Below, in pieces: positions 1 through 64,000 of a DNA stretch of 64,000 bases. The stretch comes from Iphione sp. A-MEVVRFRX5. Lineage: Eukaryota. The stretch's first letter is position 1; each line of letters opens with the position of its first letter. The notes under the pieces were generated by a model. It was not told where the DNA came from. It saw nothing but the letters and a program-made list of their open reading frames with translations, and made no database searches. A program made the translations under genes and the position numbers. The stretch is from NCBI GenBank assembly GCA_976226885.1, contig OZ320315.1, forward strand, positions 97,030,001 to 97,094,000, given 5' to 3'.

Positions 1-1340
1 TCAAGTGCCGAAGATATTGTCTGATTACATTTTACTCATTGAACTCATTGAGTCAAATATGAATGGAACCATTGGCATATTTTGTCTCCCATCCCATACC
101 ATTTTAATTTATTTAAACGCAGTTTGTGGTTAATTAAATCAAATGCTTTAGACATATCTAGAAAAACTGTACCCATGTATTTCCCAGAATTAATCAGTTC
201 ATAAATCCTTTTTAACAAAACCCCGCAAGCTATTGAAGTCCCTCTCCCCTGTCTAAAACCAAATTGATTTTGACAAAACAAATTATTTTTCTATATATAT
301 GAATAAATTTGGTTAGATACGATATGTTCCAGAATTTTACTTGGTGCCTGCAATATAGAGATAGGTCTGTAATTTTCTGATTTAAAACAACTCGACTTTT
401 TCTGGAGAGGAGTAATTGTTGCATGTTTCCATGACGCTGGGACAACACCGTCCTCTAGTGAACGATTGAGTTAAGTAAAGAAATATACAGTGCATTTTAG
501 GCTGTCCTTCAGATATCTCATAGGTAAACCTTCTATTCCCGAAGGTTTACAATCCTTCAGTTTCAAGATAAGTTTGTATACTTGGCCAAAACTTTTCAAA
601 TTCTATTAAATTTGGTCTGTCATTCTTTGAGTATGGTCCAATATTCAGTTTTAGTCCAAATTGCAGTTTCTCGGCTATTTCTTTAAATTTATGATTAAAT
701 TCTTCAGACACTGCTGCCCCCTCTATAATTCTCTCACCATCCTTCAATTTGATATCAATCCCACCCTTACGTGATCGACCAAAAGCAACACTACTAATTA
801 AATTCCACAGTCTCCTATCGTTCTCAGTTTCCAGGTAATTATTTTTAATTTCTCTGGCTAATTTGTTTACTAAATTACGAAAATAATTATACACCTGCTT
901 GTAATCTATTATACTTGACTTTATCCATCTTCTCCTGTATTGTCCCGTTCTCTACGGAGATTCAATAATCGTTGGTCCAACCATCCTGGCGTTGTAAGTC
1001 TGTGATATCTTCATATGGACAAAGTTTATCTATTACACCCATAACATTATCCACCCAACGTTCCCAAATTGCATCTACACACATACCTGGGTCAATTTCC
1101 CAATTACAATCATCAAGCATCTCTTGTAGTATTTGAAAGGTATAGTGCTTATCCATTTCTTACAGACCGCATCACTTTCTGAGCTTTCTGTCTTGATTTT
1201 TTAAAATCGACATAAGTAATATAATGATCACTATAACCACTGATTAGAACACCACATTTTATATAGTCCAAAGTTGTGGTATAAATATGGTCAAGACATT
1301 CTAGCCATTTATGGGTCACTTCATTCACCAACTGTTTTAC
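1..1340 (-). mobile_element. Decayed LINE (APE-RT ORF2) fragment
   Basis: ORF 45..281 has QFGFRQGRGT...VFLDMSKAFDLINH...W(F)HSYLTQ (non-LTR RT). ORF 1149..1331 has DHIY...SDHY (APE C-terminus). The linker ORFs between them are broken by stops and frameshifts. Confidence 0.85.
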
Positions 1341-1560
1341 ACAAGAAGAGATTATTTCAGGATTAACAAGTCAACAAGTGCTTAAACACCATTGTAACTG
1401 GATGAAGATAACAAGCTTGATAATAGTATGGTCTTCAGTATTAAATCTAATAGAGAAGAATAAATGGCATTTTGTGCTCCTAGTCTTACAAGGGATAACA
1501 ATTTACAATACATTCATGTGTAGACACTCTTTAGTTACATTCAGATTTAGTATAATCTTT

Positions 1561-2144
1561 TCAGCTCACCTGAAGACCCAATTCTTGAATCTTTCTCCAC
1601 ATGGCCTGAGTCCAATGAAATGTGCATCGCTGGATGTTTGCTCCAGGGAAGTTGGCTTTGATGCCTTTCCATATTGCCACCTCAAAATCGCTTACAAACT
1701 GTGCCAACACAGGCTGATTGGGTAGTGGTTTTCGGAGAGCTTTAAACAGCTGTTTGAACAACAATGTTTAAATATTACCAAAGTGAACCAATAGAACTCC
1801 TTAGGTAATGCATAGAACTACACAAAATAATAGCTTCAATCAGGATCAGTTAACAATATACATTTCAACTTGAAATATAGGCTGCAAAAGTCAGTAGTAA
1901 TGTATAGATTTGATAGGAAACCAAATACGACCCCTTTCATAAACAACATTTTTAAAAAGAATTTTACATTTTTGTAATCAGCTCTCTCCTCTGAATTTTT
2001 CAAGAAGCCGTGAACTGTGAAGTGTTGCTGTAATGGGTCTCGCACTGTTTTGAACGTTCCATCCGCATACCAAGATTTTGTTGTACAGCAATCGATAAAC
2101 ATTGCTCCAACCGACTCTTTCATTACAGGAAAAATATATATCAT
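1561..2144 (-). pseudogene. MULE/Mutator-like transposase fragments
   Basis: WYADGTFKTV...HFTVHGF (1836..2144) and FVSDFEVAIWKGIKANFPGANIQRCTFHWTQAMWRKIQELGL (1561..1764) match MULE transposase domain motifs. Confidence 0.8.
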
Positions 2145-2394
2145 TTATCAATGTCATTGTACTTATTGTACTTCGACCATGGGTGAACCCATGTTGACGA
2201 GGCGATGATATCTGTAGCAGAGGGGGATGGTATATAAGGAGTGGAATATCTTGGGAAGTAACAGGGTGAGAGGGACGGGGTTTTGACTTAAACGTTGTGG
2301 GTCAGGTGGCGGAGGTGGTGGTGGGGAGGTCATGGTATATAAGTATGACCAAAGCTGTGTGTAATGAATTATCCAGCTGGTGTGATCAACAGGT

Positions 2395-3135
2395 TACTAT
2401 TGAATCCTAAAAAAAGCAGTATAATCACAGTACCACCAGGTACGATGAATGTGTTAGCCCAAAGGGACACCGTTAAATTATTAGGAAACTAATCAACTAC
2501 ACTGAGACTTATAAATACTTGGGAATTATTATTGATTATCGATTAAAATTTAACGAAGAACTAAAGAAGATAATATCAATATTGAATGGTAAATTATATA
2601 TGTTAAACAGTTAAAAAACTTAAGAGCAAAGGATTTTTTACTACTTTAATCTATATGGGGTTATGAACATGTAATCCTTCGAAACAAATCGATATCCTTC
2701 AACGAGTACAAAATAGTATTGTCAATTGTATACAAAATGGAAGGAAAAATTGGAACAGAAGAATGAGTCAAAATTGTACTAAAACTACCATATGATGAGT
2801 ATTAATAGAAGAATTGATTTATTTACTGTGACTCTCCTATATAAAATGGTACGGTTAGGTACATTACTCTTGTGTCAGAATAGCAATTTACATCATCAAG
2901 ACGAACTGTGTATACAATTATGTACCCCAACATATGAACTGATTAAAAGATCATTTATAAAGAACAGATATCTTATGTAGAATAAGCTGGACGAATTGTA
3001 TAAGAACTGAGGAACATATCATGAGTATGTAAAGCTTATAAAATGATCTCACTTATGATGCACGACTACTGACATATATATTAGATGTACAATTGTTGGA
3101 AATAAAATTCCATATTATCTTATCTTATCTTAATA
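2395..3135 (+). mobile_element. Plus-strand 3' end of a decayed LINE
   Basis: LNPKKS-like RT motif near 2400, a C-terminal CTPTYELIKRSFI segment (ORF 2792..2980), and AATAAA followed by a (TCTTA)n tail at about 3103-3132. Confidence 0.5.
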
Positions 3136-3240: not shown

Positions 3241-3700
3241 TCACCATCGCAATGATTTGCCATGCAAGAACATGCCGCCCCCCATGTCCCTTTTGGCATT
3301 CATGTCAGTGATGTCCATATTCAAATGAACAATCGTATTGTCAATTATGTGCTGAGTATGATGGTCCACACTAGGATTGATAAGTGCATTGTCCAGATGG
3401 GCATTGTAGCGGCTAATGTTTTGTTGAGTTAAGGTGCAGAATGCGAATTTGTTTGCTCGGAATCGAATAAGCATACTTTTTTCGGACATGGCTGAGTTCC
3501 CATCTCATGCGATAGTAAAGTTCATCGGTTGATCCATCAAGTACTATCTGACAACTCTTTAGAGCCATTCCTAGGCGCGTCAGGTTGTTGGTGCTGGCAA
3601 GAATCATAACCAAGGCAGGCTCACGCTTGTAATCAAGTCCACGGCATACTTTATGACCACTTAAACCATCCATGCCACTCTCTCTATGTTCTTACCATCC
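3241..3700 (-). pseudogene. SGNH/GDSL-hydrolase-like ORF fragment, probably LINE-associated
   Basis: LVMILASTNNLTRL resembles SGNH block III and parallels VILGGTTDVTKL at about 53.4 kb. Confidence 0.45.
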
Positions 3701-3789
3701 CCCCATGCCTGTTATATCCCATATTGTTGTGTGTCGTTTTCTCATTATCAGAATGCCTTTGTTGCTGAGTCGACGGAGTGTTTTCAGTT

Positions 3790-4840
3790 GTTGGCCTGAA
3801 ATCTATAGCGGTCCGTACTGACCAGTAATGTTACGTCCCTCCATATTTATGCGGGCTTCAATACACATTCTGGGGAGGTATTTTTCCAGAGTGTGTTGGC
3901 CAATGGGCTGCATACTGAATGAAATTTTGCCCAAAAGATTTGGCATTGGCCAGCGATAGAACCTCCCAATTTCTGGAATATGGTTTAAATACTTCTTATA
4001 GAAAGCTACGATACACATTGGATGGTCTGGTCTACTGTAGTGTCTGACAAATCGCGGTTTTGAAGTACAGTCAAGAGATCCCGTCACCATCTTGGACAGT
4101 CGTCCTTGTATGTAATGAACTCTCTGTTCAAATCATCTAAACCCAGACTGAATTGTGTTGCTTCTAATGAGAGATGCTCATGTTTTGCCCAAAACCAAAT
4201 AATTTGCAATTGTAAAAATACACTCCGTAGGACAAGCCCTTAGCACTAGTATCATTGATTACGCCGCTGATCCACAGCTGTCTCTCACCTTCAACTGTAA
4301 TCACATCAGCACGTCGAGTATGGACTCCTAGGCCTTCTGCGATCAATTCTTTTCTCCTGGTGTCTAACGCATCCCGGAAAGTCTTAAAATGTCGTCCTTC
4401 TTCAACAACCAAACCTCGCTTTTTCCAAGGACATCACGGATAAAACGTTGAATGCCTGCTGCTATACTGGTGAGGGAGCCTGAAAAATAGTCAAATACAA
4501 TTCGCTGAGTGATTATGGTGAAGCATCGTAACTATTACAGTGCAATAAACAGTGTGTAGTGTATTATGTGAACAGAGCAGCATTCAATTCTTACTTATTC
4601 TAAATTTTTTTACCAGGAGGATATGGGGTGCTGTCTTTTTTGGTGACTTCTGTTATGAGGTGAGCCAACCAGTAATCCAGCAAATACAAATCGGTGTGAT
4701 CCAAGAAGGGGGCCGGCCAGTTCACGTCTTCTTCGCTGTCTTCATGCCAGTTTCTCCATTTTCTTCATTCTCTTTAAATCTGGACTGCCCAGTTGATCGC
4801 ATGCAAGGTATTGGTAGGGATACACTTCTGGATCCTCGTA
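3790..4840 (-). mobile_element. Crypton-like (DUF3504-type) tyrosine recombinase, pseudogenised
   Basis: Manual translation gives IPTNTLHAINWAVQI..W (about 4770-4836) and LDYWLAHLITEVTKKDSTPYPP. The ORF track gives FRDALDTRRKELIAEGLG...ERQLWISGVI...LSYGVYFYNCKLFG and CIVAFYKKYL...FYRWP...QPIGQHTL...NITG. All are typical of Crypton/ZMYM-type YR domains. Confidence 0.8.
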
Positions 4841-5228
4841 CTCAGCTGCTGGGAAGATTGGACAGTCCTGAAATGTTTTCCTTGATTTGAATTTGGAGGA
4901 GACATATCCCCACCTGTAGTCGGATTTGTCTTCGCTGCACCTGGGAATGGACAATGTACACAATCTGTAGTTAGCTTATCATATTGTATGGCAATGGCTA
5001 TATAGTCATACTTACCACGTTGTTCATGATGGCTGCTTTGAGAAGATCATTATCTGAGTCCCCTCCTTGAAATTCCTCCAAACTGGTTTCCTGGGGCAAT
5101 TCCACAACAATTTCTGTTTGAGAGATGATGAGAGATCCCAATTCTCTTGACTGAATCGGCACATCGCTCAGTTGTAGAGGGGGGGGGGTCTAAATCAGAT
5201 AAGGTACCTCGTCCTCACTGTTATGGCC

Positions 5229-5613
5229 TTATAATGGCCTCATTCGCTCCGCGAAGCTCGGCCATATGTACAATTTACGACCTTGATAATAATTGACATT
5301 CATGAATTGGTCGTCCTTCCAAAGATTGTATCCAACCCCATGTCTTTTGGAGTCTGCAAAGAGATACACATCGCCACGCGTCTCTCTCATTCCTTTGGAG
5401 CGTAGTGTAGTATGAATCTCAATTAGCAAATGCCCCAATGGATTTTGCCCTTTGTAGGTACCCGCAGGAATTAGTGGGAAACGAATAAGGGTACCGACTC
5501 CCCACAAATTTTAATGAGCATATTGCTTTGATTATAATGTCGTTCTGGAGGAACTTCGCCAAGATTTCCTGCTTCAATTGGTCTACCAGATCGACATCCC
5601 AGGATTCACTCAT
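5229..5613 (-). pseudogene. NADAR domain C-terminal half followed in frame by an SGNH-like start
   Basis: EILAKFLQNDII and LWGVG...YKGQNPLGHLLIEI match the NADAR KFxQN / WGxG / GxNxLG motifs. They are followed by DVYLFADS...YQGRKL. Confidence 0.7.
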
Positions 5614-5680: not shown

Positions 5681-5905
5681 TTGTATTGCTACACTCTGAT
5701 AACTATGAATGGACATCTCATAGAACAAGTAACCAGATTCAAATATCTTGGAATTATTATCGACAGTCACCTTGACATGATTAATGACCTAGAAGTGAAA
5801 ATCAAGAAAACTCGTAGTTTGCTAAATTTATTACGTGAAGTGAGATCGAGGAGTAATCAGAGTGTAGCAATACAATTGATTAAGTATAATTTGTGTCCTC
5901 AGTGA
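5681..5905 (+). pseudogene. Inverted LINE RT segment
   Basis: NGHLIEQVTRFKYLGIIIDSHL is the RT thumb motif and is the expected continuation of the adjacent minus-strand RT. Confidence 0.7.
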
Positions 5906-5909: not shown

Positions 5910-7804
5910 TTCTTACATTACTAATGCCATTACATTACATTATGCCATTGACCTGGCACCATTCACTTAACTTCTCAATATCCTGTTGTAAGGTTTGTCT
6001 GATGATTAACGGGTCTTTGTTCCTAATACACAGCACAATGTCATCTGCATACATTGTGCACTCAGATCCTGTGTAGTGTTTGATACTATCGTTAATGAAA
6101 AGATTAAACATCATTGGACCTCAGAGGTAGTTTATGCAAAATACATCCATTAATTTTTGTATAAATTTTTCTATGAGACAAATACGACTTAAGCCACTGT
6201 TCTATTTTTTTAAAACCCATTTAGGACAATATGATGGTTTATTGTATTGAATGCTTTACTGAAATCTATGAAGTGCCCCAACCAGATCCTCTCACTTTAA
6301 TGCCTCATGTATAAAGATTAATAGGTCATTAACTGCAGTCTGTGTTGATTTTTCTTTCTGAAACCCAAATTGTTTTTGTGAGATTAGATTGTTACAGGAT
6401 ATATAGTCACTCATCTGATCGAATACTATTCTTTCTAGAATTTTAGCAACCATTGGCAATATTGAAATCGGTCTGTAGTTCGTAACTCCATCTCTCCTTC
6501 CCTTGCCTTTATAAATCGGCGTAATGAGTGCTTCAGTCCATTCATAAGGGACTATCTGTTTTTGTAAACTATTGAGTAATACTGTAAATTGTTCCCACCT
6601 TTGCATCCAATTGCTTTAATATAAGATCTTCAACTTGTGTTTCTTGAACCATTCTAAAGCTAAAGTCATCATTAGTTGTTGGTACCCAGATAAGATTCAT
6701 TGGATTTTCTTCATGTGCTTGGGTATTTCCAATCTTTGCAAAGAAATTGTTTAATATGTTCGGTACCACTTCTGCATTTGATGCACCTTTGATGTTGATT
6801 GTAGGTGTTTTTCTTGTTTTACCCGTTAACTGCCAATATTTTCTCGGATTCTACTGTGAGTAGTAGTTGGATACACCATTTTGAATTGATCTCTTGACAG
6901 TTACAGCAACTCTCCTAGCATTTGCCAGCAAACAACTGATTCTTTTCTGCAATTTGCTTTCTGGTACATTTACTTATTTGTGTTAGCTCTATGCGTTTCG
7001 GCTGACTTTTCTTAAAAGGATAATTATCTTCAAGGAAAATCTGAATAATTCTCTTCATAAACAACCACTGATAATCTGGATCTTCAAATATTTCATACCC
7101 ACCCCAGTCTAAATGTTTGACATAATGAGTAAAATTGTCATGTGATATATTATTCCATTTTCTATAATTGAAAGATCTTATGTCCACATTAATTCTTCTT
7201 CTTTGTATGATAGTCAAAACCTCATAGTGATCACTTAGAAAAGTTTTGTTTACTCTGCTTGCTCCCTTTACCCTGTGATAAAGGAATACCAGATCTATAC
7301 AACTTCTAGTCTGCAGAGTACATCGTGTAGGGGTTTGGACGAGATCAATTTGTGGTTTTGTCATAAAGTTGTTTATCGAGTGTATTTATATTGAAGTCAT
7401 CTAACAGGCATATGCAATTATCTAGTTGACGGATCACCTCCATATGTTCATCTAGAGTCGTAATAAAGTCTACCACATTTCCCTTTGGAGGTCTATTTAA
7501 GCAGCATAATGCTAAGTTGGGCCTATCCTTTTGCTGTACTTCTAACCATATCAGTTCCATGTTGCTATAAGAAATCAGATATTTACTATTATCAAAGGTT
7601 ATTATTGATAAGCTTTCTTTATAAAAAAATATTAGTCCACCTCCCCTTTTCTTGCTTCTATCTAGGCGTATAATTAAACAGTTGGGTATATCTATTGTGG
7701 CAGTCAAGATGCTATCATTTAACCATGTTTATATCAGGATTAATCTGTTCTATGCATGTTTTTAGTTCCAACCATTTGGGCAAAAGACTCCGTATGTTCA
7801 GCAT
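5910..7804 (-). mobile_element. Decayed CR1/L2-like LINE ORF2 (APE + RT)
   Basis: APE motifs MLNIRSLLPK (about 7800), RLDRSKKRGGG, DDFNIN, SCIDLVF and SDH; RT motifs NYRPISILP, QFGFQK and YADD (about 6045). Confidence 0.9.
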
Positions 7805-8375
7805 CAAAGTTCAAAGTTCAAAGTTCTTTATTTCACATCTCTTTGTATCGAGTAGCACTGAATACATGGAGATCTTCCAGCAAAATGTATAATAGCTGAG
7901 TACTCGTTGTCATTACAATGTTACTTCCGAACAAACAATCCAATTTATAATTACTTCAACAATCCAACTTATAATCAAGATCAACTAATAGGCACACACA
8001 CACGGGTAACACAGGGCTTAATACAACTATAATTAGACAGACCATGTGTCAGACTGCATGTCCAGTACATTGTTTTTTCTTCACCTACTTATTTACACAT
8101 GATTAAGATCATTTCAACACATAAGTAACAGAATAGATTAGGTACAGATAATGCAAATGATTTCACAAAGAGAGACTGTCTCGGTCTTTGCAGCTCTGCT
8201 ACTCCAAACACACTTCTTCTGGTTGCCATTTTACTCCCCCTGGATACCTTGTTCAACCTAAGCATTCTATGCACTAGTAGTACTAACTGCTCCCTTCCTC
8301 TTACTTCAAAGGATTGTAAGCCTGCTTTCCATCTCAGGGACAGGGAAGACTCCCTGCATCTAGTCATTCCCACTT

Positions 8376-10809
8376 TCAAGGCTGTTTTTTTTTTATTTGG
8401 AGCTGGTCAACCATACTTTTGCTAGTCGATACAAACAGAGGTAGGCCATAGTCAATAGCCGGCAACACAAACGATTTGAACATTCTAACCCTGTCCACAA
8501 AGGGAAGTAGTTTCACAAGACGTGATAATACATAGGATCTCTGCCTTACTCGTTTTCTCATGTTTTCTACAAGTGGTTTCCAAGTTAACTTAGTGTCAAT
8601 CAGATACCCTAGAAAGTTAAATTGATCCACCTTACTGATTTTCACAGTTTCTTGATGCAAGTCCAGATCAAACTGACCTGCTCTACCAAATATCATATAA
8701 CAAGACTTCTTGTCATTAAGAACCAGTCCATGCACCTTTACCCAGTTGCTTACATCCTTTATACCCCTCTGTAATTTCAAACGTAGCGCCATGGCATTGC
8801 TTGCTTCCCCATAGATAGTTAAGTCATCCGCATATAAAATACTCTTGGTGATTACCTGGGCTCCCACAACTGGATTGATTACCATAGTGAACATTAGTGG
8901 GCCCATTAGGCTGCCCTGGGGTACCCCTTGTTTCACATGCAGCAGGGATGAGTTATATCCGTTACAGCGCACATATTGTTTACGATTATGAAGATAGAGG
9001 CCCATCTGATACAGATCTCACCCGCCCCCGCAACTCTCAGACTGTGTAATACTAAGTCATGGTTTATTATGTCAAAGGCTTTGGACATATCAAAATAGAC
9101 TGCACCAGTATATTTACCCATATCATTTGCCTCATAAACTCCCTTAAGAAGCTCCGCTACCGCTGTTCCAGTACTTCTCCCAGCACGAAAGCCGTGTTGG
9201 GCTTCTGTGAAATAACCTATACTTTCAAGCTTGTTCACTATCTGTTGATGCACTACCTTCTCCACTATTTTCCCAATCAGTGGGAGAATTGCCACTGGCC
9301 GATAATTCGCTTTGCTTGTCCGTGGCCCCTTCTTGTGTATTGGTACTATGCGTGCGACTTTCCAGTCCAATGGCACAGTACCAGTCAAGACCAGTTCATT
9401 CACAATCGTTACAACATGATCTAAAGAGATCAACAGAGTCTTTGAAGACCCTGGTAGGCAGGTCTGCCATGCCACTGGGTTTTTTGATGTTTATTGCCTC
9501 AATTATTTCTCTGAGCTGACTTGGTGATACAGGCTTCAAATCCCAGGTGGCAGCACTATCGACAAAATCAGTCTGAATTGGTCGAGCTAGCTGTTCTGCT
9601 TGTTCAACAAAATAACTATTTAAAACCTCTGCTACATTTGCCTCGTCTATGTCCTCATCTCCTTCCTTAAGTAATATATTCGATTGTTTTAACTTATCCC
9701 TTCTAAGGACGCAATTGATTGTTTGCCAGTATTCCTTTTGCATTTTGCATTTTCTAAGCTGCTCTTGGAAAAACTTTTTCTTTGCTTTTATCACCAACCG
9801 GCTTACCATCGATTTATAAAATTTAGAGATTCTTAAGTCATCCTCATTTGATGTCCTTTTATACTCCTTTAAAAAATGATCCCTGTTTTTCTGGCCTCGC
9901 TTATTTCTTTGGTCATCCACTCACTTCCTAGTCTTACTTTTCTGGCTACCTTAGGACACAGTTTTTCCACCGCATTTACCATGCCCGACTCCAGGACTTT
10001 CCACCTATCTTCTGGTTCATTATCCTTTTTGTCAACTAATATCTGGAGGCAATCTTCTAACTCATCCCCAAGTTTCCACCTATCATAGTCTTTCCATGCT
10101 CTTCCCATTCTAACCTCTGATTTCTTCTTCTCACATGCCTTTTTATTTACAATATACACCGGTTGATGATCACTCACATGAATGTCAAGAGTTCCTTTCA
10201 TACTGATGTCACTAAGGTTGGTGCAGACTAGATCCAGGATGGATCTACTCCATCAATGGATTATTGTCGGACCATCTATTACCTGAGTTAGCTTGTAACG
10301 GTCAAATATATCTTCTAGCAGTTGCCGCTTTCTATCTTGTCTGCTCCAGTCAGTGTTTAAGTCACCTCCTATAATTATATCAGGGTTGCGATCTCTCACT
10401 ATTCTCTTCAAGTTAACATCTAGATGCTCAGCTAAAATAGTATGCCTACCTGTGGGGGGCTGTAGATCGATCCCACATACAGAGATTTCTTGTAACTTGA
10501 TTTTATTTTTACCCACATGCTTTCAACCTCATCTTTCATTGAGTTCAATTTTATTACCTCTTCTGCTACCACACTTTTGCAGACATACGTGACCAATCCC
10601 CCTCCCCTTTCTTTGGATAATCCAGTCCTGTCTTGTCTGAATACATTGTAGCCATTAATATGTAACTGTTCATTTGGAATACTCGCCTTTAGCCACGTTT
10701 CACATATGCATAGTGCTAAAGGTTTTTCATTTACCATTAATTCAACAACTTCGGAAAATTTAGACATTAGACTTCTTATGTTCCAATAAATAACCGTTCT
10801 TCCCTTCAT
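8376..10809 (-). pseudogene. LINE ORF2 (APE endonuclease + reverse transcriptase), frameshifted
   Basis: WNIRSL, ETWL, RQDR..RGGG, GDLN, SDHQP, NYRPVAILP, QHGFR, DMSKAFD, GVPQGSLMGPLMF, YADD, FLGYLID. Confidence 0.95.
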
Positions 10810-10949
10810 GACTCTCCGTTTTTGTTCTTTCCAATTTTTATTTCACATATTAATCAGTTACAATTTGCTCACGATATAGATGTCTGTATAGAATACACCC
10901 ATCCACAGTAACATGCCATGTAGTTATTCGTTTAGCAGAAGCTATTATG

Positions 10950-11558
10950 AGTGCTGGTATCAAATAGATCACCGGCTGTCAATACAGGAATGTACGACGA
11001 ATGAAATCGACTCTCTCCCTCCCAATTTCCAGTTACATGTGGAGCCATGTTGATATTATCTACCAACAAGTCGGTTCTGAAAACCGAATGACCATACCAA
11101 TTTTCATGGATTCACCAGGATGTTTCTGGTGTGTCCAATCCATTTAGAGAATTCATATCATAGCAAAGGTTATTGAACTTTTCGATCTGTGAACATAACT
11201 CAGTTTGGCAGTACACACATGGAGGGTTGAATAATTTGGCATATGTTGGCAGAAACACCACATATGAGCTCGCACCTGTTCTGAGGCCGTTACAAATAGC
11301 ATTCATTTTATTCCACAAAACATCCGACATGGACCAACAAGAGTCAAATATTATATCGTCGACTTGACCACCCACTCGTACCAATGAGTGCAGTCCCATA
11401 TGTATCAGGGCCACATTGTAGTCCGGATCCTGATATTGGTCCAGGTGATCCACGATATATTCAAGCCTGCGATCAGTTAGCACAACTGATTCCCAGTCAT
11501 ACGAAGCATACACACGGCTGTACACTCCGTGACCCAACTGCAGTCCACGAACATTCAA
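10950..11558 (-). pseudogene. ORF-X: SGNH-hydrolase-like protein between ORF1 and ORF2
   Basis: YNVALIHMGLHSL...VVFLP...PETSW*IHE...GHSVFR. Homologous segments occur at 23.6, 37.1 and 41.9 kb. Confidence 0.6.
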
Positions 11559-11733
11559 AACTAGTTCACCTAGGCAAGAATATTTTATAAATTAAAAGAC
11601 CAGCATCAGTATATTTTGCAACTCAATTCATCATTAGAATGATAAATGCTGACTCATTTCTGGTACATGTATGATATTACTTATACAGTTACATACTGTT
11701 TGCATAATTCGCATAGCATTTTACCGTTCTGAT

Positions 11734-13309: not shown

Positions 13310-13890
13310 CATGCATTTACGACCAATCTTTGAACGTATAGAAAAATGAGTAATCTGTTGCGCCAGGGGCCTCAAGGCATGCCTCAGCAACAATTACCAT
13401 GCATGGTGATGGAAACGAGTAGTTAGCTAAACCATTGTAGGTGCTAGTAAACTGTACCAACCAGCTTAAGTCAAAATGCACATGATGGGAGAACCTTGTC
13501 GGCTGCTGCAATCACCAAACCTAAATCAGCGAACATTAATTTATAGATGGCGAGTTACAAATTCTGACATCTTTTGCATTATGAAGGAACTTGTGCGACA
13601 GCCAAATGGCAAAAAAGTATCAAAATTTGTTGAAATTGCCCAGTAGGGGCAAGTCAAGAGGGCACACAGGAAAATGCCTGTATGCCCTCTTGAGATCGAT
13701 GACAGACAGATAGGGCTCACTGATAGTGATTTGTGCAACTGTTGCTACGTTCAATATCATAAATGCGACATAAAGACTATTATCAGTAGGCGGAATCAGG
13801 TCTGGCCACACGCAGACCTTGAGGATATGCTTACGGTTGACACAGACCCTCGCGATGGCGCAAAGACCGACAACATGCTCAAGGACGGTT
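13310..13890 (-). mobile_element. Ngaro-like YR retrotransposon RT/RNase H fragment
   Basis: IDLKRAYRHFPVCPLD, LPFGCRTSSFIMQK, IVAEACLEAPGATD. Confidence 0.75.
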
Positions 13891-14419
13891 AGGTTAGGTC
13901 GTCAGGATTCTGTCTCGACTGGTAACATGTAGAAAGCGTACTGTAGTATGTCGTCGACGGAGCAGATAATCGGTACGTGGCCAACGTACACGTCGCGGGG
14001 CCTCTTTCTTCGAGTATGGTGCTTTGAAAAGTACGAATTGGTAGTTTCGCCAGACTCGATAGATATGGAAATGAGGAGCGGCCATTTTGGGCTTGCGCTG
14101 AGACGGCGAAAGCTTAGATGCAAGACATTTCCAGGACTTTTTCATGTGCTTACAAGTCCTCCGTTCTTTGTCGTCAATGAGAGCCCATATTGCCTTGTCC
14201 ATCTTCTCTATACTTTGGAGAATACACGTAACATTGAGCTGTTGAGGCACAGGTGCAGGAGGCTCAATGGATGGGCCGTGCACCGATGCCGGTGCCAGCT
14301 CGGGCCCTTCGTTGACGGTAGGCTGCCTCTTGCAACCTATTTCAACCATTCCACTACGTGGTCGGAGCCAGACTGACCAGTCGTTGACCGGACCAATGAA
14401 GCCTCATGTAGGCGCCATC

Positions 14420-15780: not shown

Positions 15781-15784
15781 CTGA

Positions 15785-16417: not shown

Positions 16418-16744
16418 AGCAAAATCTAGTTTATAACCAGAAACGGCCTGAATAACATCAGTATCCGAGGTAAGACGTTGCTACAGTGTCCTATATTGAC
16501 AAAGGCACCCAGCTTGGAATTGAGGTTTTACTTCCTCACCTGAGAAGGGGCTGTCAGCTGCTTGGACGGGGTGGCCTGGACCATCATCAGGGGCTGGGGT
16601 TGGTTTGCTTGAGATTGTTGCTGTTGTGGTTGATTCACTTGAAACAAGGGATACTGGGTATAGGGAGTATTCTGATAGTTGAACCTCCTCTTGTTGTTCC
16701 CTCTGTAATTTGGGTAATATCTTCCCCTGCCTCTGCCTCGGGGG

Positions 16745-49289: not shown

Positions 49290-49353
49290 GACAGGTACTC
49301 ACCCTTACAATGTGGTGTAGAGACAGGTACTCACCCTTACAATGTGGTGTAGA
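49290..49353. repeat. 32-bp perfect tandem duplication
   Basis: gacaggtactcacccttacaatgtggtgtaga x2. Confidence 0.95.
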
Positions 49354-50690: not shown

Positions 50691-50699
50691 AACTTGGCA

Positions 50700-53620: not shown

Positions 53621-54021
53621 TCAGTGAGAGTGACCATGTATGTACTGCATCCCGCCTGCATGATACTGCAACTTCAACCAGATTGGCTATATGGCCTATG
53701 ATATACATACATTTATTAGGGTATCCAACTTTTTAGCAAAAGCGCATAGGCCAATGATATGTTCAAACGGGTCAAGAATGTCAGCATTTGATGGCTTCTT
53801 GACTTTAGGGATATGATAGACGTGCTTACTCTTGGAATCAGGAAAATTGTTGTGCAAATAGCAGCACCGACAAATGGCTTGGACCTCTTCCTTTTCTCCA
53901 CCTTGTCATCATGGGTGTCTTGAGTTACGGGGAGAACCACGCTTGAAACCGGTTGCTGAAGTCTTGACTCATTTCTCGTGAGCTACCTGGAGGCCCAAGG
54001 AGGAAAAAAGAATCATTGCTT

Positions 54022-56050
54022 CTAGAAAGGCATCGTGCACAACCTGTGGGCTAAGACAAAGTCATCCAGGTATGCTAGAATGGAAACATTTGGAAATTTG
54101 TCTTTTATTTTTTGAGACAAAATTTGAGATATAGACTGAAGGAGAAGGGAGGAATATCTAGTTCCAAAGGGCAGTGAAAGGTCTGTGAAATACTGTTGCT
54201 GGAATTTAAAGGTTAGTAGTGGCCAGTCGAGGGGGTCAATAGGAAAATGCCTATAGGCGCGCTTCAAGTCTATAGTAGCTAAGAACATTGGGGTTGTATG
54301 TGTGGCTATGATGGCGGCCAGGGCATCCGGAGTAGGAAGCTGCACTCTTGCTGGAACATAATAGTAATTGTTACGAGGGATATAACGATTCACATTGCTA
54401 TGTGACAAGTCAATAATAATTCTCTTATCATCAGAATTCTTCTTAACCCTGGTGGTAATGGGGCTAATAGCAGAACAAGGAAAAAACGGATCACAATCAA
54501 AGGTGCCTGATATGGCCCTATATGAGAGCTCAATACAAACATATTTCTGCACATGCGGAGGATCATCTTTTTTGAGGGGGTAAAGTTTTTCACTTGGCTG
54601 TGGGATGCAGTTTCCAACAAAACCCACAGGAAAGCCATATGCAATGAATTGTGAAATCATAAATTCTGATGGGTCCTGTAGCGACAGGACCTGATACCAT
54701 GTTGGAAGGGACAGACATGTATTCAGAGGTATTTTGGCCTCCAAATGGTTGGGAAGGCCTGTGGCCTTAACACTCTGGTAGATTTTTGTAAGAGTTGTGG
54801 GAAAGACGGCTTTCGGCGTGGGCCAGGCTTGGATTTGAGAAGCAATAAGCCTGTAATGGGTGGTGGGGAGAACGTCCATGGCTGGGGTGAGGTCTAGTTG
54901 GTGTTGCTGCATGGAGCCCTCTATGGTTGTCGGGTCGTATGAATCAAGCAGGTCGGTGATGTAGTGGTGCGATGGGCATCCACCTACCATTCCGGGTCCT
55001 GCCTCGGGCGCCTGTATTCGCAGGTGTCGGCGCCCTTCTGGAACTGTTGCCCTGGTTGCGGCTGCCTCCTCCTTGATCGACACTGGTCGTGCTTGTGGTC
55101 TAGCTGCTTGTTGTAGTTGTAGTAGCAGAAGGGACATATATGTAAGAGAAATATGTCGTTAGCTTGGTGAGGAGCTGTTTCTGTGCATTTGCCCCCATTC
55201 CATCTTGGGCAAGGGGCTGAATTTTCTTTTGATAGGTAGCTGTGTCTAACACTGCTGGTAAGGTGGTAATTAATTGCCCTCTGTTTCATTTTTTCAATAC
55301 GTTCTGTTTCAGACCACTTGAGGCGATCATTAGTGGTATGCTGCCACACTTCATATGCCCACTCTTTTATGGCATCCCAGGAGGAGGCATGGACCTCCTC
55401 TCAGACATCCCTCACATGGTCAAGGATTGTATCAATGTCACACTGTTGTTCAACCGATTGATCAAGTAGCATTGACATAATTGCTGCGATATACTGTGGG
55501 AACGTTGCTTTTCTTACATCTGCTGTGGTAGAATCTTTGATGATTATATACTTTGCTGGATGAGGCTTAGATAGTCTCTTACCTACGTTCTCCAGAGCTT
55601 CTGGATACATAGTTGAAAATATCTCCTTGATTTTGCCTGTTTCATCAGCTTTGAGGTGAGATGGTCCTGGAACATTCTGGTGGCCATTGGTGTGGTCATC
55701 GTCATCTGTTTTGGATGGGCCGGGTTGACCGTTGGTGTCGGTTGGGTCATTACGTAAGTGCTTGGCTGCCGATCGGGTCACTATTGTTGATGGCTGTTTC
55801 CTTTGTTTTCCTTTTGCCGATGCTTCAATGCCCATGTTGTCCAGTCGGTCCTCTAGGGATTGTATTTTGGACAACAATTTTGCAATCATTTCGGCAGGAA
55901 TGTTGGGTTCAGCGCCCTCCGGTTGCTTAGGGTCCGGCATGATCCAAGGTTGCGTTTCACGTCTTGCCACTCTCGCATACAGGAACCAACTGATTTTACA
56001 CCGCTGGCCGCGCCAACAGGTACCTATCAGACACTACAGAGGGCGCCACT
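54022..56050 (-). mobile_element. Ngaro-like element fragment (gag, Zn finger, RT)
   Basis: ILDHVRDV; CPRWNGGKC...HICPFC...H...C; YGFPVGF, SPITTRVK, RIIIDLS, IDLKRAYRHFP, LPFG, YLDD. Confidence 0.85.
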
Positions 56051-56059
56051 CACTTGGGC

Positions 56060-59050
56060 AATACCTAGCAAACGCCAGTCGTTGGCTTTACAGTAGTGCG
56101 TGAAGGCTTGACAGAGGGCACGGTGGACAAACTATGGGCGGGTGATGTCTCGGAGGACCGCTTGGGTGTGGAACTCGCTGACTGGTGCCCTGGACATGGC
56201 ATCGGCAACCTGCATACGGGAGCCTGGTATATGGTGGTAAACCAGGCGAACCTGGGTGCGTGCCTGGTGAAACCATATCCTTCTTGTGGCTGCCAGTATC
56301 TCGGGGTCCCTGCCTCTACCTGTCTGAAGACGTGGACGTGCACTGTATGGCCCGAATCAGCTGTGGTGATAAAAGTACAAACAGCAGTTGCTACGGTGTG
56401 TTGCTCAAGTTGCGATATATGCATGGACCTACTATATAGTGGTATTTCACATGCATAATACCCGCGCCCATCGACAGTGCCTCAGCCCTGTAGACTGGAG
56501 TCCGCCTCGATTGTCCTAGCGTAACATTGATGCTGTACTAATGCCTTACCATTCCAGTCGGCCATGTAGGCAATAAACCACTGCAGATCTGCCTTCACTT
56601 CCTTATTAACCCTGATGAAAAGTCTCTCTTGCAGGGGCCATGCACTTGGCAACGAACAGCAGTTGACTGAGGAGGCTCTGGAATTGTTGTCATGAGCGCC
56701 TTCCTGCCGTATGCATCATGAATGGCCACCTTTATCTTATTTAGCTTCTCCGAGGGGATGGATAGCGTCATTGTAGCTGTGTTGATGTGGATGCCCAGCC
56801 AGACCAGTGCATGCCTCAGTGTCTGTGCCTTGGCCTTGGCTTCTGGGAGACCTAGGCTGGTGCGGAGGTGGCGTGTTTGATGAAAGGCGGTCCATGCAGT
56901 CTTGAGCATCTGGAGTGACAATTAAATCATCGCGGTACATTAGAGCATGAATATCTCGCTGACGTAGCATATAGACAATTGCATCTGCCACCTTCTGCAT
57001 GTGACATGATGAATGCTAAGAGGGGCCAATCAAGTGGGCAGGTGGTAAAGTTCTTGTACGCCCGCTCGATGTGCAGGGTAAACATATGGGCCTGAGGGCC
57101 CACGCTGCGAAGTACCTGTGTGAGGGAGTCAATTGTGGGCAATACATGGTCCTGGATGACAGTCCAACAGTCCAACTCCTTCTGAACGTAGGCGTCAACT
57201 GCAGTGGGGTGTTGAGATGCACTAGAATGATTCTCAAGGTGGCCCGTGTCTGACACGGGTCTGAGGTACCCTAATAGGAAGCCGTAGACTAAAAAGTCCA
57301 GTAATTGTGCAAACTGGGGAGTGTCAGCAGTTCGTTACGCCAAGTATGGAGATTTAGCGTGGTCGGTAAGGGGCAACGGGAGCCAATAGCATTGGGGACA
57401 CCTGAAATCCTCACGGCTTCATACGCTTCAGCAAGACCATGGGGCAAGGCATATGGAGCTAACCTTGGCCAGTAGGTCTTACGATAATGCTGCATGTCTG
57501 TAGAGCTATACAAGAGAACGGTACCTAGCGTGCCATTGGTGCATGCTTTACTAATCTTGTCAAATGGTAACGATAGCTGCTGTTGCTGTGCTGTGGTGGA
57601 GCTAGGTAAGCAAGCCCGTACCTGAGTATGGCTCTGACCAGAGGGTTGATGTTGGCCGTGGTCCTCTGGTGAGGCTGCGGAAGCGGCCCTCACTCGTTTT
57701 TTGGCTGTGTTGTAGGGGCCTGATACCGGTGCTGTTGTTGGTGTTGGTAAAGTAGGTGGCTGCTGGTGCCAGGAGTGCAAGTTCCTTGCGGACTGTGGCT
57801 GGGCATTTGCAGTAGTCTGTCGCTGTGTAGACGTGGCCTTGAGGTGCTTTCCACAGGCTCTGAGCATATGAGCATGTCGGGCACCAGAAAGCGCATAGCA
57901 GTAGGCACATACATGAAGAAACACATGGTTATCAGTACAGTGAGAAGGAGCATGCGTTTTGGCCATATTCAGGGCAAGGAACCTCCACTTGTGTTGGTTT
58001 TGTGGACTTAACCTCTCCTGATGTATACGAAAGTCATCTTGCCAGGTAAACTTATCTTGTCAAGGACATTGTTGGACCACCTGAGAATTGGCTCCCAGTC
58101 TCCCCGTTTAGCGTCTTGGGAGACAGAGCATGTTCTAATATGGCCATCCTATCTGCATACGAGGTTGAATTGTCGTCTAAGACCAATGACAATAGTGTGG
58201 GCATGAACTCTTTGTAAGTCATAGAGGCCCTATACTCGGCCTTTGCCTTTGGTGCCCAAGCCATCCTTATCTAAGTACATGTGCGGTTTTGAGATAATAT
58301 TGCGGATACGAATGTCATGGTTACCTGCCTGAGGGTTGTCACTCGAAAGCCAAGGTGCCGCAGCCTCTAGGTACGAGTCTATGTATTGTTGTGTCCCCGG
58401 TGTTCTACATAGCTGAGCCGGTGTGGGAGCCTGTATTTGTTGAGGGCAATGCTGCACAAAGTGGTTTGCATTGGTCAAGGCGGTGGCAGCATGCTGTGAC
58501 TGGGCCGGTCAGACAGGTGCAATACTGGCTTGATCGGTTTGAGCAGCAAGACATTGGTCCATGTGGTAGGGCTGAGCTGGCTGCACCATTGCTGTCGTCT
58601 GTTGCCTAAAATGAGAATTATTTTGTTGGTCAGTAACTTTACCCTGTGAAGCAGGTTGCTGTGTCTGCACATTTGCCATGGCCTGCTGGACAAGAGTGGA
58701 TAATTGAAACATATGCTGTTTCAATTCATCCACGTCTGTAACGAGTCACTGCTGGGTGGGCACAGCCAACGGGCGCTGGCGCCGAGGTGTAGCCGGGTCA
58801 CGGTTGCCCTCGGTCCGGTCTGGGTGTACGTTGTCGGCATTCGGAGCATTATTCTCTTGTTGAGCTTCTTGTTGGTTGACTGCTTCGTCCTGGTCCGCCA
58901 TGATAAAAGAAAATATATGAAATTGCGGCTTGGATAGATACGAACAGAGATGGCGAGTAGTGCCTTCAAGCAAATCACAGCAATGACTAAGTGAGCGTAA
59001 AGCCGCCCCCTGCCGCAATGTCCACGCATTAATATGCTAAACCCATTAAT
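56060..59050 (-). mobile_element. Ngaro-like element, decayed (gag, Zn finger, RT, RNase H)
   Basis: HVCAYC...H...C; LPTIDSL...IERAYKNF..CPLDWP; YRDD; WLGI; HISQLE; HIPG...ADAMSR. Confidence 0.8.
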
Positions 59051-59199
59051 CACAATACGCAACCTGGGCTTAAAACAATTTTATTTTGATTTACTCACAT
59101 GGACACTAAGAATGTAGATAAACACAAATGAGACACAAGTGAATTAAATTGGCAATAGCAGGTTAATGTTAAAATAAATATATGTTTATGAACGTATAA

Positions 59200-60190
59200 T
59201 TGTGGCCTTGACCGCGCTTATGATGTTGTTGACCGAGGGAGGAGACATAGTCGGGTGTGGTCGAGGCAGAAGGCAACAAATCTTTTAACGGCTGACCGTC
59301 TATTGGCTAAAGTCCCGGGCGCACCGCCTGAGTCTGCATCTCTGCCCGGGGTCGAGTGTGTTGAGATGTGGGTCTAACACAGAAATAATCGTATTGAATG
59401 GCCAAAGAAGAAAAAGAAATGGGTTTTAACGACATTTAGGCAATGAGACGATCAGTATTAACTCTGTGGGCCGAGAAAGTGTGATACCTAGATAATGCGT
59501 CCGCAAGTTCCGGGTCACGACCAGGTACATGCTAAAAAGAAATTATGTTCAATAGGGATGCAATATGAGATCATCTTTCATCAGGTCCGGCCTGTACTGA
59601 GGGGTGTCAGTTTTTTTTGCAGCTGCGACAGTTGAGTCGGGTTTGTCCTGTCGTCAGGTTTGTCCTGTCGTTCCAGCCTCTTGAACTGTGGTTTGTGAGC
59701 AGTTGGGAACCTACCGTCACGGTAATGCTGGGTTGACTCGTCCTGTTTACCGTGTAACCTTGTCTTTCTCACGCATGCCTGTGCGGTGTGGGTACGCTCA
59801 GAGTTACCCACACCATACCAACAGACCGCGCAGTGGTGTGACTGGGTAATAACATCAGCTGAATGGCCGTCTTGCTCCATATAAGAGCCTGCATTATAAA
59901 AGTGGCAGGGGGCTCGTTTCAAATCGTCAGATACAGTCCCGAGGACCAGCGACTGGTGCGTATGCATAGATTGTATTACGTCATCATTACACCAGGTAAT
60001 TTTGTCATGGTTGACCACCAGCATGTCACTGCATCTTTGCATACCTCCACAATATGGTGCAGAACGTGCTTTCTTAGAGCACGGTCTCTTGCGAAGGTGC
60101 AGAGGCCGATGACATTCTCAAGGACGGTCAGGTCGTCGGGGTTCTGTCTAGACTTAACTGAAGCAGTCAAATTTAGAGGGAGAGTCATGT
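59200..60190 (-). mobile_element. Ngaro-like remnant: gag Zn finger, RNase H end, YR N-terminus
   Basis: APCHFYNAG...HHCAVCW...H...C; HVPG..ELADALSR; AVRPGTLANRRSAVKRF. Confidence 0.7.
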
Positions 60191-60430
60191 AGGGTCTTTG
60201 AAAATATATTTGTCTTTAATTGGGTCGCATATATGCTTACCAGCCACATTGGGAAACTGAGGCACCTCGTCGTTTATTTCTTTTTCGGGGGTTCGGCTTG
60301 TGAGCAACCATTTTTGTGTTAGAGGGATCGTTTCCATTGTTGTTATTTTCTGTGGCTAAGTCATATAGTATCGAGAACCTGTTATGTGTGTATTGGTATG
60401 GGCGTATGTCGATCACTTACTAGTTTTTTC

Positions 60431-62160: not shown

Positions 62161-62479
62161 AGAGTTGTCTGACCCTTAGGCTTCAGGGCGGTTGGGATGG
62201 TAGGGCCATTCTTGGGCTCAGGAGTGGCAGTGACATCCAGGGGGGGATGTGGGGGGGGAGTTGGGTGCTCACTGAGCTCCTGCTTCTTGTGATCATCTTG
62301 ATGGATGTCAACTGCACATGACCTGAAATACCTGAGGAGCCCAGAAGAGAATGCCTAGCCAAGTCACCTGCAGGAGGTATCTTAACTTTGCAGAGGATAA
62401 CTGTACTGCCTACAGAGTTTCCTATATTCATATTTTGATTATTTCTTAGTCTCATGATGAGTGTTTGTATCATATTGCT

Positions 62480-63150
62480 TTGATTTGCGTTTATAAATTA
62501 GGAGAAATCAATGAGTGTCCCTTCTAATGAAGTGGTCTTTTGGGGGAATGTTGTCAACTGAAGTACTGACTGTGAAGCCTCCTATGTCAAAAATAGTGTC
62601 TTCCATCATTTCAGATTTATTTCATCGAGGTTCGTAAAATTAAGCATATTGCTTCTGTAATTGATAAGAAAACCTCCTCCTGTAACCTCTGCGATTGTAC
62701 CTGCCCCTGCCCCTGCCTCTGTAACGGCCTGAATAGCCCCTGGCAGGGAACTGAGGTTGGCACCTGACAAAACCCCATGAGGCGAGTCATAGTCTCCGGA
62801 GATTCGATGTCTCTAAACTGTCCCCAAAAAGCATCATAGCTAATGCAGGAGCGTCTGGAGACACCAATCTTTTGTGTTCAGGGGCAAGAAAGGGTTTAAT
62901 GTCATCTCTCGGCATTTTTATAAAGTAAGAATCAATGAGACCCAAGACAAAACCAAGGACATTATGGTACATATGGTACAACCCTTTCCAGATCTGTAAC
63001 AGCGATACAAGATGCTGGGTGTTAAAGAGGTCATCTACGGTAGGTAAAACGTGTGTGAGAGATACCATTGACAACATTTTTCTGAATGTAACTTTTCACG
63101 TCATACACCTCTGCATACGACAGATCAACAATTACCCTTTTGGTGCCATC
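62480..63150 (-). pseudogene. DIRS1-like gag/ORF1 fragment
   Basis: RDDIKPFL..EHKRL...P...LFGDSL followed by an RG-rich stretch. Confidence 0.5.
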
Positions 63151-63199
63151 ACTCTTGTCCCTGGTCATGAGGGGGGCACTACAGACCACGGGGAAAACG

Positions 63200-64000
63200 G
63201 AGGTATGACAAACTGTGGATGGCGCGAGCCATAGGGGTGGTTGTCGAGTTGCCCCCCCTCCCAGCAGTAGGGGGGCTTGCGTACTGCATAGAAAAGCCGA
63301 ACTCTCTGCCGTTGAGGACTAGCTCATCATCAGGATGTCTTGTAGCAATTGCTCACCAGAAGGGGAGTGAAAGGGTCAAGGGGGATCTGGGCACTGCAGG
63401 CATTGTTGACGCCACGAACCTCGACTGCATCATACAGGTACTGAAGGTGAGGCTGGGCGAGCGGTGTTAGATGTGGCCACACATAAGCCCTACGGTTACA
63501 GAGAGCATCGCTGTACACCACGACAGGTGGCTGCTCCCTGAAATTAGAAAAGAAAATGGGGGAAAGGCCGGCTGTGTCGGGGGAGGTCTGGTGTACTACA
63601 ACCCGACGTGAGTAGTGATGGAGGGGGGCTGGGCTGTTGGCGGGGCTGTTGGGGCAACAACAGCCCCGCTGTCGTTGATGGAATTGGGATAGATGCCAGG
63701 TCTGGGTGAGGTGTTATGGTATGGGCCCCTACCCCCGCTCATCAATGGTTGGGCGGGGGCCCAAGCTCCTGGACTTGTTGTGGAGGTTCGGCTGTAGGTG
63801 CAGAGCCGGTGGGACAAATGACTGCAGACTTGCACCAGCTGGATATGCAGTACCGACCTGTTGTAGCGGGGTAGAGTGCACATGCGCTGCCGAGAGTTAG
63901 TTACAGTTGCAGGGTGACGTATTGACGACGTTGGGGCTTCACCTATAAGGCAGCCCAATGCTGGAACGCAGCAGCGTGTGCAGTGTACCGAGGTGCACGT
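63200..64000 (-). mobile_element. Ngaro-like pre-RT region fragment (runs off the window edge)
   Basis: YVWPHL...YLYDAV..RGVNN parallels NWPKP...IYDAVRATGYPN at 31.4 kb. Confidence 0.55.

What the first reader, a model, noticed from the sequence alone, without database searches (positions are those of the whole stretch)
1..64000. Extreme strand bias of unrelated transposon fragments: candidate uni-strand piRNA cluster
Seen: about 30 fragments of LINE, Ngaro/DIRS, Crypton, MULE and Harbinger origin all code on the minus strand. Only three short plus-strand pieces were found (about 2.4-3.1, 5.7-5.9 and 43.5-44.1 kb), and no host gene. Established: uni-strand piRNA clusters such as Drosophila flamenco accumulate nested TE fragments antisense to the cluster transcript. 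Inference: a long plus-strand precursor yields antisense piRNAs here.
Basis: inference. Interest (0 to 1): 0.75.

Follow-up and report, generated by a model that had tools for sequence, protein, structure and literature searches.

The report
One-strand transposon array, candidate piRNA cluster
Almost every jumping-gene remnant in this 64-kb window and in the 100 kb on each side points the same way, the layout of a locus that makes transposon-silencing piRNAs, but no RNA data could be obtained to show that it does.

Summary
In the window, 35.1 kb is homologous to transposon proteins on the minus strand and 0.375 kb on the plus strand. Over window plus 100-kb flanks the figures are 120.9 kb and 3.7 kb.

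About 50 LINE copies, about 20 DIRS/Ngaro-like pieces, 8 Cryptons and 1 Harbinger lie on minus. On plus there is one full LINE and two pieces of at most 200 bp.

Duplication does not explain this. The region has almost no DNA self-similarity, and its LINE copies share a median of 37% amino-acid identity. Younger elements sit inside the coding bodies of older ones in the same direction, including a Crypton inside a LINE esterase ORF. Relatives elsewhere in the genome lie on both strands.

No host-gene domain, tRNA or Rfam RNA was found.

The piRNA-cluster reading fits the anatomy but is untested. The content is LINE and tyrosine-recombinase elements, not Gypsy, so it is not flamenco-like in cargo.

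The scan reported the same array before on adjacent DNA; together those notes suggest about 0.7 Mb.

The parts
1..1340 (-). LINE ORF2 fragment (ORF2 residues about 174-774; runs over the left edge of the window)
   Evidence: ORF2 profile hits
2786..2959 (+). Short LINE ORF2 C-terminal fragment on the plus strand (residues 834-891), one of two exceptions in the window
   Evidence: E 8.7e-05
3283..5381 (-). LINE esterase ORF (EST 54-179 at 3283-3643, EST 10-46 at 5271-5381) split by a Crypton fragment (DUF3504-type tyrosine recombinase, 3812-4316) in the same orientation
   Evidence: DUF3504 assignment
5699..5899 (+). Short LINE ORF2 fragment on the plus strand (residues 721-787), the second exception
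   Evidence: E 3.4e-17
5941..7728 (-). LINE ORF2 fragment (residues 38-699)
8152..13215 (-). Near full-length LINE: NADAR ORF1 (11740-13215), middle ORF C10 (10983-11564), APE-RT ORF2 residues 5-891 (8152-10797)
   Evidence: Pfam RVT_1 and NADAR; profile map
13329..16273 (-). DIRS/Ngaro-like pieces: RT, C8, C12 and a complete tyrosine recombinase ORF (14739-15566)
16739..17904 (-). LINE ORF1 (NADAR) fragment
18159..18742 (-). DIRS/Ngaro-like RT plus C8 fragment
20986..24924 (-). LINE: ORF2 residues 5-903 (571-aa open frame), C10, NADAR ORF1 fragment. Closest relatives elsewhere in the genome are 69-75% identical in protein
25505..27664 (-). 5'-truncated LINE, ORF2 residues 181-902 (614-aa open frame). 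Part of it (24921-26219) is 93% identical to a copy on C1
28004..33038 (-). Near-complete DIRS/Ngaro-like element (C7, RT, C8, C12, tyrosine recombinase) with 84-bp direct repeats 97.6% identical at 28877-28960 and 32955-33038, plus a second truncated copy at 28004-28708
34378..39190 (-). Full-length LINE: ORF2 residues 6-915, C10, NADAR ORF1
39147..39557 (-). DIRS/Ngaro-like RT fragment
40020..42204 (-). Decayed LINE (ORF2 residues 48-776, C10)
42462..43280 (-). Harbinger/PIF transposase fragment (DDE_Tnp_4, Plant_tran)
44809..46500 (.). Tandem array, 342-bp unit x 5, 96% matches, open on the minus strand for 404 codons. A related copy lies 17 kb left of the window in direct orientation
47098..48482 (-). 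NADAR ORF1 fragment and DIRS/Ngaro-like C12 and C7 fragments
49228..53537 (-). Two LINE copies (ORF2 residues 3-755, decayed; ORF2 residues 234-915) and an esterase fragment
53607..60203 (-). Several DIRS/Ngaro-like copies (C7, RT with a 378-aa open frame at 54025-55158, C8, C12)
63055..63506 (-). DIRS/Ngaro-like RT fragment

Best explanation
The window is an internal piece of a very large array of transposon insertions. I measured at least 264 kb; the scan's notes on adjacent DNA suggest about 0.7 Mb. Independent insertions of many LINE lineages, DIRS/Ngaro-like retroelements, Cryptons and a Harbinger have been kept almost only when they point along the minus strand.

The most likely cause is that the plus strand is transcribed as one long precursor and cut into piRNAs, that is, a uni-strand piRNA cluster or 'transposon trap'. 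A minus-oriented insertion then yields antisense piRNAs against its own family. That benefits the host, and such an insertion does not bring sense-strand termination or splice signals into the precursor. Plus-oriented insertions do neither and are lost.

Shown here: the orientation bias, the independence of the insertions, the nesting in situ, and the absence of recognisable host genes.
Inferred: transcription, its direction, and processing into piRNAs.
For: 1. Bias. In 264 kb, 120,893 bp are homologous to TE proteins on minus and 3,696 bp on plus. LINE ORF2 chains are 53 minus and 3 plus loci. Esterase hits are 26:0, NADAR ORF1 39:1, Crypton 18:0, DIRS/Ngaro RT 27:0, tyrosine recombinase 9:0. 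In Pfam, 28 minus ORFs carry RVT_1 against 1 plus ORF.

2. Independent insertions. A blastn self-comparison finds only two tandem arrays and short matches; all 56 pairs are direct and none inverted. LINE copies share a median of 37% and a maximum of 73% amino-acid identity.

3. Insertion in situ into element bodies, in the same direction.
- A LINE is split exactly at ORF2 residue 454/455 by a complete LINE, at window coordinates 147096-154181.
- Two further LINE-in-LINE cases have poly(A) or (AAT)n tails at the junction.
- A Crypton splits a LINE esterase ORF at EST residues 46/54.

4. The bias is local. Relatives of one LINE elsewhere in the genome lie 41 on plus and 34 on minus (my count of the rows), and the top RT hits are also mixed.

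5. No host-gene domain on either strand; no tRNA or Rfam RNA.

6. Precedent. A sliding-window scan for TE strand bias found flam-like clusters of 227-1,085 kb in Drosophila species, and small-RNA sequencing confirmed those it was tested on (PMC10643416).
Against:
- The promoter and both borders lie outside the DNA I could fetch.
- Most copies have no close relative elsewhere. The best matches are 65-71% in DNA and 69-75% in protein. piRNAs made here would therefore match few living targets. The DNA search skips very common words, so this is a caution, not a proof.
- AATAAA is not depleted on the plus strand beyond what composition predicts: observed/expected is about 1.2 on both strands.
- Substitutions within the two tandem arrays show no strand asymmetry, but only 93 events could be scored.
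Confidence: 0.55

Rival explanations
1. The array lies in a giant intron, or in a long non-coding transcription unit of a plus-strand host gene. Sense-oriented transposons were removed because they disturb splicing and polyadenylation. No piRNA role is needed.
For: An antisense bias of LINEs and LTR elements in introns is well documented (PMC3088655). A note from this scan reports co-oriented recombinase relics antisense to a host gene elsewhere in this genome (unchecked). I did not reach the borders.
Against: No host-protein domain was found on the plus strand in 264 kb. An intron of several hundred kb would be exceptional for an invertebrate. From general knowledge, the intronic bias is a modest excess, not about 97:3, and it is weak for DNA transposons; here Crypton is 8:0 and Harbinger 1:0. 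AATAAA is not specifically depleted on plus.
Confidence: 0.17
2. The direction is set at insertion, not by selection. New elements target existing ones in a fixed direction: LINEs prime on the tails of other LINEs, and recombinase elements integrate into homologous copies. The array then grows co-oriented without any transcript.
For: Many LINE clades with microsatellite tails insert into like tails, and DIRS elements are known to pile into their own copies (general knowledge, not tested here). Junctions of two nested LINEs show poly(A) or (AAT)n tails.
Against: The nested insertions sit in coding bodies, not in tails: ORF2 residue 454/455, ORF2 about 277/320 and 614/641, and esterase 46/54. 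Four mechanistically unrelated classes share the direction: target-primed reverse transcription, retroelements with a tyrosine recombinase, a tyrosine-recombinase DNA transposon, and a DDE transposase. There is no common satellite or telomeric scaffold.
Confidence: 0.1
3. A direction-dependent process other than transcription biases which insertions occur or survive, for example a fixed direction of replication-fork movement across the region, or a chromatin domain.
For: LINE integration shows a mild preference relative to the replication direction in human cell assays (general knowledge). CpG o/e is 0.55 with a TpG/CpA excess of 1.23 across the region, which suggests germline methylation (no genome baseline available).
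Against: The known replication effect is far too weak for about 50:3 and is not known for recombinase or DDE elements. Substitutions in the local tandem arrays show no strand asymmetry, though on few events.
Confidence: 0.06
4. The co-orientation is a by-product of tandem or segmental duplication of one composite unit.
For: Two small tandem arrays exist: a 1.39-kb unit x 5.3 at about 50-43 kb left of the window, and a 342-bp unit x 5 at 44809-46500.
Against: Outside those arrays there is almost no DNA self-similarity. Paralogous ORFs share a median of 34-55% amino-acid identity, and none exceeds 80%. Each LINE copy is as far from its neighbours as from copies on other chromosomes.
Confidence: 0.02

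Closest known systems
Uni-strand piRNA clusters in general (Drosophila flamenco and cluster 20A; uni-directional clusters described in other animals)
   Same: Hundreds of kb in size, gene-poor and packed with nested transposon fragments. Nearly all fragments lie in one direction, as expected if they are antisense to a single long precursor (PMC10643416).
   Different: No small-RNA, transcript or promoter evidence here. The organism is an unnamed non-model invertebrate. The bias covers every class seen, including DNA transposons.
flamenco and flam-like somatic clusters of Drosophila
   Same: Layout and size range (227-1,085 kb in PMC10643416).
   Different: In flam-like loci the bias is carried by Gypsy/ERV elements only. 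Here no integrase, protease, gag or env domain was found, and the cargo is LINE (NADAR ORF1, esterase, APE-RT), DIRS/Ngaro-like, Crypton and Harbinger.
Antisense bias of transposons in host-gene introns
   Same: The same direction-dependent survival of insertions in a transcribed region (PMC3088655).
   Different: The magnitude (about 97:3 by bases), the extent, the inclusion of DNA transposons, and no detectable host exons in 264 kb.
Telomeric head-to-tail retrotransposon arrays (HeT-A/TART type)
   Same: Co-oriented LINE copies.
   Different: The position is internal (97.0 of 118.4 Mb), many unrelated lineages and classes are present, and insertions sit inside coding bodies rather than end to end.

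Membership tests
Uni-strand piRNA cluster | Large gene-poor region dense in transposon fragments | tested here: met
   46% of 264 kb is homologous to TE proteins. Only TE families appear in Pfam on either strand. No tRNA or Rfam RNA.
Uni-strand piRNA cluster | Transposon fragments overwhelmingly in one orientation | tested here: met
   120,893 bp minus against 3,696 bp plus; 384 against 10 domain hits. Whether that orientation is antisense to a transcript is not known.
Uni-strand piRNA cluster | Abundant 24-32-nt small RNAs with 1U bias from one strand only | not testable with these tools
Uni-strand piRNA cluster | Long single-stranded precursor from a discrete promoter | not testable with these tools
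   No RNA data.
flamenco-like somatic cluster | Enrichment and antisense bias of Gypsy/ERV elements | tested here: not met
   No rve, RVP, gag or env family among the 133 minus ORFs of at least 150 aa. The families are RVT_1 (LINE and DIRS type), APE, NADAR, DUF3504, DDE_Tnp_4 and GDSL.
Tandem or segmental duplication | DNA similarity between repeated units | tested here: not met
   Only two small tandem arrays. Paralogue identity has a median of 34-55% aa.
Telomere-type head-to-tail LINE array | Terminal position, dedicated LINE families joined end to end | tested here: not met
   The window is at 97.03 Mb of a 118.4-Mb contig. Insertions are nested in ORF bodies and four TE classes are present. 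Telomere-repeat hexamers are at background level.
Intronic antisense TE bias of a host gene | Flanking exons of one host gene, spliced across the region | tested here: inconclusive
   No host domain among the 150 longest plus ORFs. Small exons cannot be excluded, and the borders were not reached.

The most novel reading that the evidence does not exclude
A master piRNA locus of about 0.7 Mb in a non-arthropod invertebrate in which orientation selection acts on every transposon class, including cut-and-paste and tyrosine-recombinase DNA transposons. It would also hold the only surviving copies of many LINE lineages, making it an archive of extinguished invasions and not a store of fragments of currently active families.
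Probability: 0.3. Interest if true: 0.7.

Novelty: new member of a known kind. Interest (0 to 1): 0.5.

Why it matters
If small RNAs confirm it, this would be one of the largest and cleanest uni-strand piRNA clusters outside insects. It carries LINE and tyrosine-recombinase elements instead of Gypsy-type retroviruses. That would show that the 'trap' layout, and selection on insertion direction, are general solutions and not a Drosophila speciality.

It would also give a ready test of the trap model. Many lineages here are represented once and have no close copy elsewhere in the genome.

If it is only a long host transcription unit, it is an unusually extreme case of orientation selection.

Tried and rejected
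- Borders. I did not ask for loci through another tool.
- Duplication. Rejected.
- Poly(A)-signal depletion on the plus strand. Not seen beyond composition.
- Splice-donor hexamers. No strand difference.
- Telomere hexamers. Background level.
- Strand asymmetry of substitutions within the two tandem arrays. 93 events, none significant.
- Target-site duplications at three nested junctions. Not resolved, although tails were seen.
- MULE. No Pfam support in any ORF tested.
No support.
- CpG o/e of 0.55. Suggests methylation, but no genome baseline could be fetched.
- Literature searches for piRNA clusters in hemichordates, annelids or nemerteans found nothing that applies.
Full report
**Where the window lies.** The window is G000:C4:97,030,001-97,094,000 of a 1.18-Gb genome in 89 contigs. 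I fetched 100 kb on each side (L001-L020). All statements therefore cover 264 kb, from window coordinate -99,999 to 164,000.

- Stop-to-stop ORFs of at least 150 aa number 39 on minus and 1 on plus in the window. At 200 aa or more the counts are 23 and 0.
- In 8-kb bins the imbalance continues through the whole 264 kb. The only clear plus-strand island lies about 76-68 kb left of the window.
- Pfam on the minus ORFs gives RVT_1, Exo_endo_phos and Exo_endo_phos_2, NADAR, GDSL lipase, DUF3504, a weak Phage_integrase and DDE_Tnp_4. Homologues of the weak integrase ORF carry PF00589.
- As a matched pair of scans, 133 minus ORFs of at least 150 aa hit only transposon families: RVT_1 in 28, NADAR in 9, APE in 8, DUF3504 in 2, DDE_Tnp_4 in 1 and GDSL in 1. 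A few spurious hits come from one tandem-repeat ORF.
- The 150 longest plus ORFs hit one family once, an RVT_1.

**An annotation-free test agrees.**
- I ran all-against-all blastp on every open segment of at least 50 aa. It gave 2,993 minus-minus pairs and only 159 pairs between opposite strands.
- The opposite-strand pairs trace to two places: a LINE at -77 to -72.7 kb and a 230-bp piece at 5672-5902.
- Plus-plus pairs are the antisense shadows of minus coding sequence, or tandem repeats.

**Profiles built from the region's own ORFs, kept in reference coordinates.**

| Profile | Minus hits | Plus hits |
|---|---|---|
| LINE ORF2 | 195 | 8 |
| Esterase | 26 | 0 |
| NADAR ORF1 | 39 | 1 |
| Middle ORF C10 | 20 | 1 |
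| Crypton (DUF3504) | 18 | 0 |
| DIRS/Ngaro RT | 27 | 0 |
| C7 | 16 | 0 |
| C8 | 27 | 0 |
| C12 | 7 | 0 |
| Tyrosine recombinase | 9 | 0 |

- Chained into copies, this is about 50 LINEs, about 20 DIRS/Ngaro-like pieces (28 chains), 8 Cryptons and 1 Harbinger on minus.
- On plus there is one full-length LINE (ORF1, C10 and ORF2 residues 12-910, at -77.9 to -72.7 kb) and two short ORF2 fragments in the window (2786-2959 and 5699-5899).
- In bases: 120,893 minus and 3,696 plus over 264 kb; 35,126 and 375 in the window.
The one at 43.5-44.1 kb has no support, and MULE was not found.

**The insertions are independent.**
- A blastn self-comparison of the 264 kb finds only a 1.39-kb x 5.3 array (about -50 to -43 kb), a 342-bp x 5 array (44809-46500) and short matches. 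All 56 pairs are direct and none is inverted.
- Paralogous ORFs are distant. LINE APE-RT copies share a median of 37% and a maximum of 73% identity. The medians for the other families are ORF1 34%, esterase 37%, Crypton 55% and DIRS RT 45%.
- One LINE ORF (21420-23132) has its closest relatives elsewhere in the genome at 69-75% identity. Those relatives lie 41 on plus and 34 on minus by my count of the rows.
- The best RT hits genome-wide are likewise mixed in strand.
- DNA searches with 17 kb of the window found mostly 65-71% matches and one piece at 93%. That tool skips very common words, so rarity is not proven.

**Insertion happened in place, into the bodies of older elements, in the same direction.**
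- One LINE is split exactly at ORF2 residue 454/455: its C-terminal part is at 147096-148457 and its N-terminal part at 152856-154181. A complete LINE (ORF2 residues 3-907) lies between them.
- Two more cases are split at about residues 277/320 and 614/641 by full-length LINEs. Their poly(A) or (AAT)n tails abut the junction.
- In the window, a Crypton fragment (3812-4316) separates esterase residues 10-46 (5271-5381) from residues 54-179 (3283-3643).
- These cases argue against tail-targeted growth and against any mechanism specific to one class.
- A DIRS/Ngaro-like element at 28.0-33.0 kb has 84-bp direct repeats that are 97.6% identical. A 924-aa ORF2 at L014:3403-6174 is fully open. The array therefore holds young copies as well as decayed ones.

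**Nothing else was found.**
- The window has no tRNA and no Rfam family.
- The one notable plus-strand ORF in the flanks is L018:3308-4411, which reads as a signal peptide, LRR, mucin-like stalk and transmembrane segment.
- It has 98%-identical copies on C15 and C26. It is therefore itself a dispersed sequence, not an anchored host gene.

**Interpretation.**
- A region-wide directional filter acting on four mechanistically unrelated transposon classes is best explained by transcription of one strand.
- The only known kind of locus with a bias of this size is the uni-strand piRNA cluster.
- A strand-bias scan of exactly this type found flam-like clusters of 227-1,085 kb in Drosophila species, and small-RNA sequencing confirmed those it was tested on (PMC10643416).
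- I therefore rank that reading first, at 0.55.
- Indirect sequence tests were uninformative. AATAAA is not depleted on plus beyond composition. Substitutions in the tandem arrays show no strand asymmetry on 93 events. CpG o/e is 0.55, but there is no baseline.
- The main rival is a giant intron or other long host transcription unit (0.17). It cannot be excluded without the borders.
- The cargo differs from flamenco because no Gypsy/ERV domains are present. Membership in the flam-like subclass is therefore not claimed.

**Earlier notes of this scan (unchecked leads).**
- The same one-strand layout was reported 60 kb to the left and at 122, 184, 370 and 432 kb beyond the window's end. Three follow-ups reached the same verdict, also without RNA data.
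- Together with my 264 kb, that suggests about 0.7 Mb.
- Another such locus is noted 18.9 Mb further along the contig.
- The three-ORF LINE layout noted just left of the window matches what I see: NADAR ORF1, then an esterase or C10 ORF, then APE-RT.

Noticed in passing
L018:3308-4411 (+), window coordinate about 137.3-138.4 kb: An intronless 368-aa plus-strand ORF that reads as signal peptide, LRR N-cap and LRR, Thr/Pro-rich stalk, transmembrane segment and proline-rich tail. It has no Pfam hit. Copies 98% identical lie on C15 (two) and C26, and there is a wider family of about 50 loci, so the gene was dispersed recently.
   Followed up: partly
window 8152-13215, 20986-24924, 34378-39190; L012-L013: LINEs with three coding parts: a coiled-coil plus NADAR ORF1, a middle ORF (either a GDSL/SGNH esterase or an unassigned 'C10' ORF), then APE-RT. 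NADAR in a LINE ORF1 is unusual. It is present in at least 18 copies in 264 kb.
   Followed up: partly
L014:3403-6174 (-): A fully open 924-aa APE-RT ORF2 inside the array, so this may be a still-competent LINE copy.
   Followed up: no
window 20986-23541 and genome-wide: The genome holds a very large number of distinct LINE lineages with open ORF2 frames of about 930-980 aa, each only 48-69% identical to this copy. The array copy has no relative above 75% protein identity.
   Followed up: partly
window 44809-46500 and L009 (about -17.2 to -16.6 kb): A 342-bp tandem repeat (114 codons) that stays open on the minus strand for 404 codons. A 74%-identical copy lies 62 kb away in direct orientation. 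It may be a repeat internal to an unidentified element.
   Followed up: no
L005-L006 (about -50.3 to -42.9 kb): A tandem array of a 1.39-kb unit, 5.3 copies at 93% identity, with a 223-aa open frame on the minus strand and no Pfam family.
   Followed up: no
whole 264 kb: CpG observed/expected is 0.55, with TpG/CpA at 1.23 and GpC at 0.94. That is the signature of germline CpG methylation across a gene-free transposon region. No genome baseline was available.
   Followed up: no
window 28877-28960 and 32955-33038: 84-bp direct repeats, 97.6% identical, bracket a near-complete DIRS/Ngaro-like element, which points to a recent insertion.
   Followed up: no
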